The position numbers and the translations under genes are program-made. DNA of 63,384 bases, filler included, from Octopus bimaculoides (lineage: Eukaryota), in the NCBI RefSeq assembly GCF_001194135.2. It is 6 parts of 5 records of this genome, joined end to end, with 100 filler letters (N's around TTAATTAATTAA, not from the genome) between each part and the next. Parts side by side here need not be neighbours in the genome. Positions count along the whole stretch, not along the records: positions 51,567 to 59,175 come from NC_068988.1; 5 more parts are not named here. One strand, written 5' to 3'. The notes beneath the pieces are model-generated. The model was not told the DNA's origin and searched no databases. It saw only the letters and a program-made list of their open reading frames with translations. Below, piece after piece: positions 55,481 to 57,907 of this stretch (position 1 is its first letter; every line of letters starts with the position of its first letter).

Positions 55481-57018
55481 AAAGAAATCTGTAGTGAGTT
55501 GCGGGTCCAATTATTATAAACATATGTGCATTTTTTTGTATTAAATATGTTTAATATTCTTAGTATATCGATTTGCCTAACATGCTTATCCTTACATTTA
55601 CTCCTCTACCTACCCAAGTTTAAACCTTTTGAGCACTACGAACTGTATTCTATACGGAGAATAAAGATATANNNNNNNNNNNNNNNNNNNNNNNNNNNNN
55701 NNNNNNNNNNNNNNNNNNNNNNNNNNNNNNNNNNNNNNNNNNNNNNNNNNNNNNNNNNNNNNNNNNNNNNNNNNNNNNNNNNNNNNNNNNNNNNNNNNNN
55801 NNNNNNNNNNNNNNNNNNNNNNNNNNNNNNNNNNNNNNNNNNNNNNNNNNNNNNNNNNNNNNNNNNNNNNNNNNNNNNNNNNNNNNNNNNNNNNNNNNNN
55901 NNNNNNNNNNNNNNNNNNNNNNNNNNNNNNNNNNNNNNNNNNNNNNNNNNNNNNNNNNNNNNNNNNNNNNNNNNNNNNNNNNNNNNNNNNNNNNNNNNNN
56001 NNNNNNNNNNNNNNNNNNNNNNNNNNNNNNNNNNNNNNNNNNNNNNNNNNNNNTATATATATATATATATTAGGGATCCCAAGTGGCAGGTAAGGCTATG
56101 TAAAGTGCTATGGAAGGACCGTATTTAAACTCTCAGTTCGATAATAATACAAATGAGGAGTTTAATGCGGGTCTTGTATGAACATGTGTCTGTTAAATAA
56201 AATGAGACAACAAAGCCAAGGTTGTGTGGAATTTTCAGGACATTTATAAAGAGAAAATTATCTATTTTGTACCTGAAGTGGAATCGGTATAGAAATTTGG
56301 CTCCCTTGTTATAATATAATCGCTATATTATGCGACTCATTCTATTTGATTTTTAAAAGGGAATAATTTATATGCGTTTCTTTCTTGTTCTTGAAAATCC
56401 GTTTAGAAACATATTATTCACAAAAGGATTATTATTTCCTATCGCTATCTTTAAATTGGATTTAAACTTCTTATGTGGAAGATAAAGACAATGTAAACAG
56501 AAATATAATTAGATGTATTTCCAACAAAATCAACAAAGTTAATTAGTATTTCTTTGCCACAAATTTCTGATAATGGTAAAGATTAACTTCGTTGCAGCCA
56601 AAACAAAGTAGAAAAATATACGATTACATATAATATTAACTATTATTTAAAATTTACATTTAAAATCAGGAGAAATTTTCAGTATACGGAAAATCTTGCA
56701 GCTAAATGAGAGAACCGCTATTTACAAGAAATAGCAGCTACATTCCATTCATATCACATTATATAATCATTAAAATGTGAAGGACATTGTGCCTAATATA
56801 AAACGTGAAATGTCTTTGTTTATAAGTCTGCTGTGTCTTGATTGGCTTGAGTCTAAAGAAAAATAAAAGTGCAATGTTATTATCCGTCCGAATATGCTTG
56901 AGGCGCGTTCGAACTGGGGAACAAGCTACTCACTGCGTTTTGTCACGAAGAATATATCTCGCTTGTTGACAAGTGGTGTGTATACCCCAAGACTAGCTCG
57001 CAGCGTCAACTACCTAGA

Positions 57019-57066
57019 CTGTGAGATGTTAACATTTCAGAGTAGTTGTCCCCTCATCGGTCACAG
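57019..57066 (-). ncRNA. Type I hammerhead ribozyme, copy 1 (with loop-II pseudoknot partner)
   Basis: CTGTGA-CCGATGA-GGGG[ACAACTA]CTCT-GAAA-TGTTAACA-TC-TCACAG. 6-bp stem I, palindromic stem III ATGTTAACAT, AUC cleavage triplet, U4C core variant. Confidence 0.8.
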
Positions 57067-57342
57067 ACAATAAGCAAAAGACAGTGCGAGCTGAATTAAG
57101 ACATTACTTCTCTTGTGCTTTTCTAGTCACCATAGAGTGACTGGCAGCGCTGTACAGCAGCTCGCCGTAAGTAGATTACAGCGAGGGGGTGCAATGATAT
57201 GTAAAATTGTAATGTTATTATCAGTCTGAATATGCTTGTTGCACGTGCGAACTGGGGAATAAGTTATTCACTGCATTTTTCCACGGAGAATATATCTCAC
57301 TGGTTGAGAAATGGTGTATATACACATAGATCAGCTCGCAGC

Positions 57343-57390
57343 CTGTGAGATGTTAACTTTTCAGAGTAGTTGTCTCCTCATCGGTCACAG
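57343..57390 (-). ncRNA. Type I hammerhead ribozyme, copy 2
   Basis: CTGTGA-CCGATGA-GGAG[ACAACTA]CTCT-GAAA-AGTTAACA-TC-TCACAG. Same fold as copy 1, with one stem III mismatch. Confidence 0.75.
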
Positions 57391-57907
57391 ACACTAAGCA
57401 AACGACACTGCGAGTGGAATTAAAAGATTAAAAGTAGTAAGTGTAGAAGGAAATTGCTCTAGTATGTACTGGGAACAAAATTAAAAAGGTGGGGAAACAA
57501 CCAGAATTATCCTGCCAGGCTGCATGCTACAAATTGCGAGAGAGAAAATAATGTTGCACGTATGAAAAGAAATGGCACAGTGAGTGGGAAAATGAAAAAT
57601 TTATAGTTCGGCTTGTGTCTGAAAGTTTCAGTAATTGGGGCTAAACTAAACATTTTTGACAAAAATCAGTTTCTTAAAGTGCTTTATGGCAGATGCATCG
57701 GGTAACATGATTTCTTGCCATCGTTTAAGCTCTCAGTCCGCATCCCATGTCCCCATTTGCCTTTCATCTGCACGAAACGATCAAATCAGAGATATTCTGG
57801 TGAATATCTCTCGTGTCGATATTCTGATGTCGATGCAATCACCTAAAACTGGCAGGTTTTATACATACAAACATTCATGCATGCATGCGTGCACGCGCGC
57901 ATATGTG

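What the first reader, a model, noticed from the sequence alone, without database searches (positions are those of the whole stretch)
56865..57425. Tandem hammerhead-ribozyme repeat: candidate retrozyme able to release a 324-nt (circularisable) RNA
Seen: a diverged direct repeat (56871-57100 vs 57209-57425) with no ORF. On the minus strand each copy folds as a type I hammerhead: stem I CTGTGA/TCACAG, core CCGATGA, stem II with 7-nt loop ACAACTA, GAAA, palindromic stem III ATGT-TA-ACAT and an AUC cleavage site. The predicted cuts (57349/57348 and 57025/57024) are exactly 324 nt apart. The hammerhead segment is better conserved between copies than its surroundings. Established: metazoan non-LTR retrozymes are tandem arrays of monomers a few hundred nt long, each with a type I hammerhead; they are processed into circular RNAs and are thought to be mobilised by Penelope-like or other retroelement RTs. 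Penelope-like RT/GIY-YIG remnants lie 1.4 kb away (52450-55480). Inference: this is a copy of a retrozyme family that may be undescribed in this genome. Caveat: the core carries U4C and stem II opens with G-U rather than G10.1-C11.1, in both copies.
Basis: partly seen in the sequence, partly recalled or inferred. Interest (0 to 1): 0.92.

Follow-up and report, generated by a model that had tools for sequence, protein, structure and literature searches.

The report
Two-hammerhead retrozyme-like repeat, variant core
This is a short, old, two-unit copy of a known kind of animal mobile repeat that carries self-cutting hammerhead RNA motifs; it is built to release a 324-nt RNA, but a change in the catalytic core probably makes this copy weak or dead.

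Summary
On the minus strand, two diverged direct repeats (57430-57193 and 57106-56855) each carry a complete type I hammerhead topology. The predicted cuts after C57349 and C57025 are exactly 324 nt apart. A descriptor scan finds only these two motifs in the 7.6-kb piece. Random sequence gave 0 comparable hits in 2000 simulations. The hammerhead is the best-conserved 48 nt of the repeat (46/48 versus 80% elsewhere, p=0.004). The 10-nt palindromic helix III is predicted to pair the two motifs into a double hammerhead. The 324-nt unit folds better than shuffles (z about -3).

This matches metazoan non-LTR retrozymes, which are now regarded as non-autonomous relatives of Penelope-like elements. 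The neighbouring RT/GIY-YIG remnant belongs to the Hydra clade of these elements and is bounded by (TA)n tracts. The array lies 785 nt outside that insertion and shares no sequence with it.

Doubts remain. Both cores carry U4C, whereas eight hammerheads from related elements all keep U4. Rfam and a model built from those relatives do not score the motif. So family size, cleavage and circles are untested.

Verdict: a new member of a known kind, probably a decaying copy. Interest is modest.

The parts
56855..57480 (-). Whole array: about 1.9 tandem units of a 324/338-bp repeat. The upstream limit is uncertain; similarity fades between 57430 and 57480.
   Evidence: Local alignment finds no significant further unit upstream or downstream.
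57341..57392 (-). Hammerhead A. Stem I is GUCUGUGA/UCACAGGC (8 bp including one G.U). Core CCGAUGA is at 57384-57378 (C4 = 57383). Stem II is GGAG/CUCU with loop ACAACUA (57373-57367). GAA is at 57362-57360. Helix III is AAGUUAACAU at 57359-57350 (A.A mismatch at 15.2/16.2). C17 = 57349; the predicted cut is 57349|57348.
57019..57066 (-). Hammerhead B. Stem I is CUGUGA/UCACAG (6 bp). Core CCGAUGA is at 57060-57054 (C4 = 57059). Stem II is GGGG/CUCU with loop ACAACUA (57049-57043). GAA is at 57038-57036. Helix III is the perfect 10-nt palindrome AUGUUAACAU at 57035-57026. C17 = 57025; the predicted cut is 57025|57024.
57025..57348 (-). The 324-nt RNA that double cleavage would release (5'-UCACAG...AACAUC-3'). 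GC is 42%.
   Evidence: Linear fold -87.1 kcal/mol, z -3.2, 0/100 shuffles as good. Circular fold -83.0, z -3.06, 1/300 shuffles as good; flanking windows give z -0.4 to -1.6.
57331..57342 (-). 3' strand of the closing helix beyond stem I (GCUGCGAGCUGA). It pairs with 57094-57085 in the released unit.
   Evidence: MFE structures. The equivalent complementary pair beside hammerhead B (56995-57007 / 57080-57092) is listed.
57085..57094 (-). 5' strand of the closing helix (UCAGCUCGCA). An 18-nt unpaired stretch (loop 1 side) lies between it and stem I of hammerhead B.
57005..57018 (-). 14-nt insertion directly 3' of stem I of hammerhead B. It is absent from copy A.
53940..55290 (-). Neighbour, not part of the array: a decayed Hydra-clade Penelope-like element. 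It holds the RT C-terminal/HTH-like region (FLDITLDL from 55265), the linker CxCX5C (CNCQVSQLC from 54344), and GIY-YIG-type endonuclease remains with CKLC and CKH.
52450..52768 (-). Neighbour: a second endonuclease remnant (VVYQCDV...CDLCLSERL), consistent with a partial tandem copy of the Penelope-like element.
56054..56070 (.). (TA)8.5 tract at the upstream edge of the Penelope-like insertion, next to the N gap (55672-56053). The matching (AT)15 lies at 51567-51597.
   Evidence: Hydra-clade elements insert into (TA)n (PMC8557442).

Best explanation
The locus is a short, old genomic copy of a hammerhead-bearing tandem repeat of the metazoan non-LTR retrozyme type. Such repeats are non-autonomous relatives of the terminal repeats of Penelope-like elements. 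It was inserted on its own, 785 bp outside a decayed Hydra-clade Penelope-like element.

How the design works (inferred from the anatomy and from published work on this class): a transcript of the minus strand carries two type I hammerheads. Each has a helix III too weak to form on its own. The two 10-nt palindromes pair with each other into a double hammerhead. Each core then cuts after its C17 (57349 and 57025). This releases a 324-nt RNA with 5'-OH and 2',3'-cyclic phosphate ends, held together by stem I plus a 10-bp closing helix. A cellular RtcB-type tRNA ligase could seal it into a circle, and a Penelope-like reverse transcriptase could copy the circle into new tandem insertions.

State of this copy (inferred): probably weak or inactive. 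Both cores carry U4C, copy A has a mismatch in the palindrome, and the units differ by about 18-20%.

Shown here: the motifs, their non-random nature, their preferential conservation, the predicted double-hammerhead and self-paired folds, and the identity of the neighbouring element. Not shown: transcription, cleavage, circles, and other family copies.
For: - Motif anatomy and exact 324-nt spacing.
- Chance expectation is 0.008 per piece for the relaxed descriptor, and 0/2000 for motifs of this quality.
- The hammerhead is 46/48 conserved versus 80% in the rest of the repeat (p=0.004). One of the two differences keeps the stem II pair (G.U to A-U).
- Cofolding of two copies, and the MFE of the tandem transcript 57440-56990, both pair the two palindromes as a double hammerhead with stem II formed.
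- The unit is more structured than shuffles (z about -3), unlike its flanks.
- It fits the published description of non-LTR retrozymes: 150-450 bp tandem units, type I hammerhead with 6-bp helix I, 4-bp helix II and palindromic helix III, GC <50%, no LTR/PBS/PPT, co-occurrence with Penelope-like elements (PMC7229834; PMC4209133).
- Retrozymes are related to the terminal repeats of Penelope-like elements (bioRxiv 10.64898/2026.07.22.740005).
- The neighbour is a Hydra-clade element (CxCX5C linker; relatives with DKT).
- Hammerheads of that clade also have 9-10-nt (quasi)palindromic helix III and a non-G-C pair at 10.1-11.1.
- The array shares no sequence with the element and lies outside its (TA)n boundary.
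Against: - U4C is present in both cores. All eight Hydra-clade hammerheads I recovered keep U4, and U4C is reported to lower activity considerably in vitro.
- No Rfam hammerhead model scores the motif even at E<=10. This is weak evidence, because Rfam also missed a perfect-core hammerhead in locus L001.
- A covariance model built from seven Hydra-clade hammerheads does not find the motif.
- There are only about 1.9 units, and TRF does not report a 324-bp period.
- No other copy of the family was found in any searchable collection. Multi-copy status, covariation and the family consensus at position 4 are therefore unknown.
- No clear target-site duplication was found.
Confidence: 0.7

Rival explanations
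1. The locus is an active retrozyme whose family naturally uses a C4 core. Both units cut as a dimer in vivo and yield a 324-nt circular RNA. U4C together with G10.1-U11.1 would then be a tolerated, selected variant rather than damage.
For: - The hammerhead, including C4, is kept at 96% identity while the rest of the unit is at 80%. This is hard to get from neutral decay in place, and suggests the units diverged while the ribozyme was under selection.
- A U4C hammerhead still supports viroid infectivity (PMC3088659).
- An axolotl retrozyme hammerhead with a U.U mismatch at the base of helix II cleaves efficiently in dimeric constructs.
- The double-hammerhead fold is predicted.
Against: - Only two copies are available and they are not independent. 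p=0.004 is moderate.
- Copy A has lost one palindrome pair.
- Only 1 of 9 predicted retrozyme dimers cleaved in vitro in the 2026 preprint.
- U4 is kept in all eight related hammerheads.
- No expression data could be obtained.
Confidence: 0.15
2. The array is not a separate non-autonomous element. It is a leftover piece of the pseudo-LTR of an autonomous Penelope-like element, either the neighbouring one or an older one now deleted. The hammerheads would then have served to process that element's own RNA.
For: - It lies on the same strand as, and upstream of, the Hydra-clade remnant.
- Penelope-like elements carry hammerheads in their flanking repeats (PMC4209133; PMC8557442).
- In intact relatives the hammerhead sits between tandem ORFs (L001 3817-3859; L003 1727-1775 and 4205-4253).
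- The assembly gap 55672-56053 hides the 5' part of the element.
Against: - In relatives the hammerhead lies only about 115-160 nt from the ORF ends. Here it is at least 785 nt beyond the (TA)n tract that marks the insertion edge.
- Nothing in the array matches the sequence downstream of either endonuclease remnant or any relative's locus.
- The model built from the clade's hammerheads does not score it.
- Two hammerheads 324 nt apart with no coding sequence between them is the retrozyme layout, not the layout of a Penelope-like element.
Confidence: 0.12
3. The hammerhead-like motif arose by chance inside an ordinary local duplication and has no ribozyme ancestry.
For: - The core departs from consensus (U4C), and the base pair at 10.1-11.1 is G.U.
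- Rfam gives no hit.
- The two copies count as only one independent occurrence.
Against: - 0 of 2000 simulated pieces gave a motif with stem I >=6 and stem II >=4, even with the relaxed core.
- The motif also has a perfect 10-nt palindromic helix III and a closing helix. Neither was required by the descriptor.
- It is the best-conserved window of the repeat.
- A hammerhead-carrying retroelement family sits next door.
Confidence: 0.03

Closest known systems
Metazoan non-LTR retrozymes (Cervera & de la Pena 2020, NAR 48:5054; PMC7229834), e.g. coral 220-240 bp, mussel 350-390 bp and axolotl 330/350 bp repeats
   Same: Tandem units of a few hundred bp (here 324/338). One type I hammerhead per unit, with 6-bp helix I, 4-bp helix II and a palindromic helix III suited to dimeric action. 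No coding capacity, GC 42%, self-paired unit RNA, and Penelope-like elements in the same genome.
   Different: There are only about 1.9 units at this locus. The core is CCGAUGA (U4C) and the 10.1-11.1 pair is G.U. Multi-copy status, circular RNA and cleavage were not testable here. No sequence match to any published retrozyme could be looked for beyond a text search.
Hammerheads in the pseudo-LTRs of Penelope-like elements, Hydra clade (Craig et al. 2021, PMC8557442; Cervera & de la Pena 2014, PMC4209133)
   Same: Type I topology, 5-6-bp helix I, 4-5-bp helix II with an A-rich loop (AAACUAGA in L003 versus ACAACUA here). Helix III is a 9-10-nt (quasi)palindrome. The 10.1-11.1 pair is usually not G-C. 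A Hydra-clade remnant lies 0.8-1.4 kb away on the same strand.
   Different: The relatives read ...CAUGAAACA..UGU-A with U4 and H17=A. The window reads ...CUCUGAAAUG..CAU-C with C4 and H17=C. A covariance model of the relatives gives no hit. The position relative to the ORF does not fit, and there is no shared flanking sequence.
Newt/salamander satellite 2 hammerhead repeats (about 330 bp; Epstein & Gall 1987, as summarised in PMC7229834)
   Same: Unit length of about 330 bp. The hammerhead has a weak palindromic helix III and cleaves efficiently only as a dimer.
   Different: Those occur as very large arrays in vertebrates with a consensus core. Here there is one short array, apparently in an invertebrate-type context (Hydra-clade element), with a variant core.
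Natural U4C hammerhead variant of a viroid (cited in Perreault et al. 2011, PMC3088659)
   Same: The same core substitution. It is reported as strongly reduced in vitro yet sufficient in vivo.
   Different: That is a plant viroid hammerhead in a different context. It says nothing directly about an animal dimeric hammerhead.

Membership tests
Hammerhead ribozyme, type I | Three helices around a junction, with helix I open-ended, in the order stem I 5' - core box 1 - hairpin II - GAA - hairpin III - H17 - stem I 3' | tested here: met
   The descriptor scan finds 57392-57341 and 57066-57019 on the minus strand only. 0/2000 random pieces reach this quality.
Hammerhead ribozyme, type I | Conserved core C3, G5, A6, G8, A9, G12, A13, A14, A15.1-U16.1, and H17 not G | tested here: met
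   C-GAUGA, GAA, A...U and C17 are read directly in both copies.
Hammerhead ribozyme, type I | U at core position 4 | tested here: not met
   C at 57383 and 57059. Eight related Penelope-like hammerheads all have U4. U4C is a known natural variant with reduced activity.
Hammerhead ribozyme, type I | G10.1-C11.1 pair at the base of helix II | tested here: not met
   G.U in both copies. This feature is also missing (U.U or A-U) in most Hydra-clade hammerheads and in axolotl HHR_Amex2.
Hammerhead ribozyme, type I | Match to the Rfam hammerhead covariance models | tested here: inconclusive
   No hammerhead hit at E<=10 on 7.6 kb or on 441 nt. The same scan at E<=1 also missed the perfect-core hammerhead of L001, so the negative result carries little weight.
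Hammerhead ribozyme, type I | Mg2+-dependent self-cleavage 3' of H17 | not testable with these tools
   This needs in vitro transcription.
Metazoan non-LTR retrozyme | Tandem repeat units of about 150-450 bp, with at least two consecutive units carrying a complete type I hammerhead | tested here: met
   Two hammerheads lie 324 nt apart in about 1.9 units. Caveats: TRF reports no 324-bp period, and 'complete' holds only if C4 is accepted.
Metazoan non-LTR retrozyme | Non-coding, no LTR/PBS/PPT, GC below 50% | tested here: met
   No conserved ORF and no protein homologue in six frames. GC is 42%.
Metazoan non-LTR retrozyme | Unit RNA is highly self-paired | tested here: met
   z is -3.2 (linear) and -3.06 (circular), with 56% of bases paired. 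Flanks give z -0.4 to -1.6.
Metazoan non-LTR retrozyme | Multi-copy family dispersed in the genome, with covariation in the stems | not testable with these tools
   The source genome is not available. Pattern scans of the metagenome, viral and prokaryote collections gave zero hits, as did the protein-word search and the exact-product look-ups.
Metazoan non-LTR retrozyme | Expressed as linear and circular RNA of unit length | not testable with these tools
Metazoan non-LTR retrozyme | Co-occurrence with autonomous Penelope-like elements | tested here: met
   Hydra-clade remnant at 55290-53940 and 52768-52450.
Pseudo-LTR hammerhead of a Hydra-clade Penelope-like element | The hammerhead lies about 115-160 nt from the ORF ends, between tandem element copies, inside the (TA)n-bounded insertion | tested here: not met
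   For relatives. In the window the array lies at least 785 nt outside the (TA)n at 56054-56070.
Pseudo-LTR hammerhead of a Hydra-clade Penelope-like element | Sequence/structure match to the clade's hammerheads | tested here: not met
   Model R1, built from 7 relatives, gives 6 bits (E 8.9) at hammerhead B and nothing at hammerhead A.

The most novel reading that the evidence does not exclude
The two units diverged while their hammerhead, including C4 and the G10.1-U11.1 wobble, stayed under purifying selection. This would be a retrozyme family with a naturally functional U4C core acting as a dimer, which would be an undescribed active core variant in animals.
Probability: 0.15. Interest if true: 0.55.

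Novelty: new member of a known kind. Interest (0 to 1): 0.3.

Why it matters
If the family proves to be multi-copy and expressed, it would add one more species-specific retrozyme, and it would place that retrozyme beside a Hydra-clade Penelope-like element. That placement fits the recent proposal that animal retrozymes derive from the terminal repeats of Penelope-like elements.

The only feature with wider reach is the U4C core. If it is kept by selection and still cleaves as a dimer, it would widen the accepted hammerhead consensus, and with it the search descriptors that currently miss such motifs. As a single decayed copy, the locus is ordinary repeat annotation.

Tried and rejected
- Rfam scans at E<=10 on the whole piece and on 441 nt gave no hammerhead. 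The only hits were microsatellite-driven miRNA matches and weak C/D-box noise. I judged this uninformative, because the same library missed a perfect-core hammerhead in L001.
- The search for other family copies failed everywhere. I tried two degenerate patterns on the metagenome contigs, one pattern on viral contigs and one on prokaryote genomes, a six-frame translation of the array against the 5.8-billion-protein set, exact-product look-ups of two window ORFs, and full-text and supplement searches for the motif strings.
- A covariance model built from seven Hydra-clade hammerheads gave no significant hit on the window. The idea that the motif belongs to that sequence family is rejected.
- Homology of the array to the neighbouring element or to relatives' loci was tested by sensitive blastn, with no result.
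- A third unit upstream or downstream was tested by local alignment. Scores equal the shuffled background, although two short collinear matches at 57601-57552 hint at a degenerate unit without a hammerhead.
- G-to-A hypermutation as the cause of the strong strand skew over the Penelope-like remnant is rejected. Intact relatives have the same G-poor sense strand.
- CpG decay as an explanation for the conservation pattern: 6 of 12 CpG sites are kept, which is not informative.
- No convincing target-site duplication was seen at the array ends. There are only T-rich, low-complexity similarities.
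Full report
**Observation**

The minus strand of 56855-57480 holds two diverged copies of one sequence. The repeat finder reports 56855-57004 vs 57193-57342 (81%, spacing 338) and 57016-57106 vs 57340-57430 (89%, spacing 324). 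A MAFFT alignment shows that the two spacings differ because of a 14-nt insertion (57018-57005) present only in the downstream copy.

Reading the minus strand, each copy contains CUGUGA-CCGAUGA-GG(A/G)G-ACAACUA-CUCU-GAA-A(A/U)GUUAACAU-C-UCACAG. This is the order of a type I hammerhead:
- stem I 5' strand;
- core box C3-A9;
- hairpin II (4 bp, 7-nt loop);
- G12-A14;
- helix III beginning A15.1 and ending U16.1;
- C17;
- stem I 3' strand.

**Is it more than chance?**

I wrote a descriptor in the style of RNAmotif with a deliberately relaxed core (C[C/U]GANGA). It finds these two sites and nothing else on either strand of the 7.6-kb piece. In 2000 first-order Markov simulations of the piece, the relaxed descriptor hit 0.008 times per piece. 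No simulated hit had stem I >=6 bp together with stem II >=4 bp.

Two features that the descriptor did not ask for are also present:
- Helix III is a 10-nt palindrome, perfect in copy B.
- A 10-bp closing helix (57342-57331 with 57094-57085) lies beyond stem I.

Between the two copies the hammerhead is 46/48 identical, against 156/195 in the rest of the repeat (Fisher p=0.004). It is the single best-conserved 48-nt window. Of the two differences, one changes G.U to A-U in stem II and keeps the pair. The other breaks one pair of the palindrome in copy A. The two copies are duplicates, so together they count as one independent occurrence of the motif.

**Folding**

Two copies of hammerhead B cofold into the textbook double hammerhead: the palindromes pair with each other and hairpin II is formed. 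The minimum-free-energy fold of the tandem transcript 57440-56990 likewise pairs the helix III segment of A with that of B.

The 324-nt unit folds at -87.1 kcal/mol as a linear RNA (z -3.2, 0 of 100 shuffles as good). As a circle it folds at -83.0 (z -3.06, 1 of 300). Flanking windows of the same length give z between -0.4 and -1.6.

**Surroundings**

A read-through translation of 55290-53940 finds proteins of about 700 aa at E down to 8e-27. These relatives carry DKT in place of DKG, and a CxCX5C linker before a GIY-YIG domain without the CCHH motif.

These are the features that Craig et al. 2021 give for the Hydra clade of Penelope-like elements. That clade also inserts into (TA)n and carries canonical hammerheads (PMC8557442). 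The window keeps CNCQVSQLC, CKLC and CKH.

A second endonuclease remnant lies at 52768-52450. The whole complex sits between (AT)15 at 51567-51597 and (TA)8.5 at 56054-56070, next to a 382-N assembly gap.

The hammerhead array therefore lies 785 nt outside the insertion. Sensitive blastn finds no similarity between the array and the rest of the piece.

**Relatives' hammerheads**

I fetched nine loci encoding Hydra-clade relatives and scanned them. Their hammerheads sit about 115-160 nt from the ORF ends, between tandem copies. Examples are L001 3817-3859 and L003 1727-1775 and 4205-4253.

They share several features with the window motif:
- type I topology;
- a 5-6-bp stem I;
- a 4-5-bp stem II with an A-rich loop;
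- a 9-10-nt (quasi)palindromic helix III;
- usually a non-G-C pair at 10.1-11.1.

They also differ. All eight have U4; one of them has the known U3-A8 covariation. They read ACA...UGU-A where the window reads AUG...CAU-C.

A covariance model built from seven of them does not detect the window motifs. The window hammerhead therefore has the same architecture but belongs to a different sequence family.

Rfam found no hammerhead in the window. However, it also missed the perfect-core hammerhead of L001, so that negative result carries little weight.

**Comparison with what is known**

Cervera & de la Pena 2014 describe most metazoan hammerheads as type I, with a 6-bp helix I, a 4-bp helix II and a short palindromic helix III that forces dimeric action (PMC4209133).

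Cervera & de la Pena 2020 define non-LTR retrozymes as follows (PMC7229834):
- tandem repeats of 150-450 bp carrying such hammerheads;
- GC below 50%;
- no LTR, PBS or PPT;
- expressed as self-paired linear and circular RNAs of about 170-400 nt;
- circularised most likely by a tRNA ligase;
- found together with Penelope-like elements.

[quoted passage not shown] It also reports that only 1 of 9 predicted dimers cleaved in vitro.

The window array meets every structural criterion I could test. What I could not test is decisive for full membership:
- No other family copy was found in any collection.

**The variant core**

U4C is a documented natural variant. It lowers activity considerably in vitro, yet still allowed viroid infectivity (PMC3088659). 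A weakened base of helix II has a precedent in the axolotl HHR_Amex2, whose dimeric constructs self-cleaved much more efficiently than monomers.

Several points argue against activity:
- U4 is kept in all the related hammerheads.
- Copy A has a mismatch in the palindrome.
- The units are 18-20% diverged.
- The experimental success rate of predicted dimers is low.

One point argues for past function with C4: the hammerhead, C4 included, is much better conserved than the rest of the unit. This would not be expected from neutral decay of two initially identical units in place.

**Verdict**

It is unproven in its functional claims.

My estimates are:
- about 0.7 that this is a genuine member of the retrozyme class that is weak or dead at this locus;
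- about 0.15 that it is active with a functional C4 core;
- about 0.12 that it is better described as a stray pseudo-LTR fragment of a Penelope-like element;
- about 0.03 that the motif is a chance occurrence.

It is a new member of a known kind, and interest is modest (0.3).

Noticed in passing
window 51567-56070: The decayed Penelope-like element belongs to the Hydra clade (CxCX5C linker, no CCHH motif). It sits between (AT)15 at 51567-51597 and (TA)8.5 at 56054-56070, matching that clade's reported preference for (TA)n targets. Two endonuclease remnants (54344-53940 and 52768-52450) suggest a partial tandem.
   Followed up: partly
window 51567-55566, extreme at 53000-54030: There is a very strong strand asymmetry: + strand GC skew is 0.3-0.83, and the sense strand of the element has 6-11% G. 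Intact relatives' ORFs are similarly G-poor on the sense strand, so most of this is intrinsic to the element rather than hypermutation. The almost G-free stretch downstream of the first endonuclease remnant is unexplained.
   Followed up: partly
window 55672-56053: An assembly gap of 382 N sits directly beside the (TA)n tract. It hides the 5' part of the Penelope-like element, including any hammerhead of its own.
   Followed up: no
window 57865-57962, 58735-59042: (TG)n/(CA)n and related microsatellites produce a series of sub-threshold Rfam miRNA matches (mir-3149, mir-466, mir-297 and others). These are compositional artefacts.
   Followed up: yes
window 58348-58386 and 58501-58539: A 39-nt direct repeat, 90% identical, 153 nt apart, unrelated to the hammerhead array.
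   Followed up: no
window 57601-57552 (minus strand): Two short collinear matches to the unit: the stretch just 5' of the hammerhead, and TTCATACGTGCAACA versus the unit's TTCGCACGTGCAACA at a spacing of 315. These could be a degenerate third unit that has lost its hammerhead. The alignment score is not above shuffled background.
   Followed up: partly
L007 3169-3215; L002, L005, L006, L008: Among the Hydra-clade relatives, one hammerhead has the U3-A8 covarying core (UUGAAAA). Most have U.U at 10.1-11.1, so strict descriptors that demand G10.1-C11.1 miss them. Rfam models did not detect the perfect-core example in L001, the only hammerhead-bearing locus besides L002 that I scanned with Rfam.
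   Followed up: partly
window 56894-57073 (+ strand): A 59-aa ORF lies antisense to hammerhead B. It is interrupted in copy A and has no homologue, so it is spurious.
   Followed up: yes
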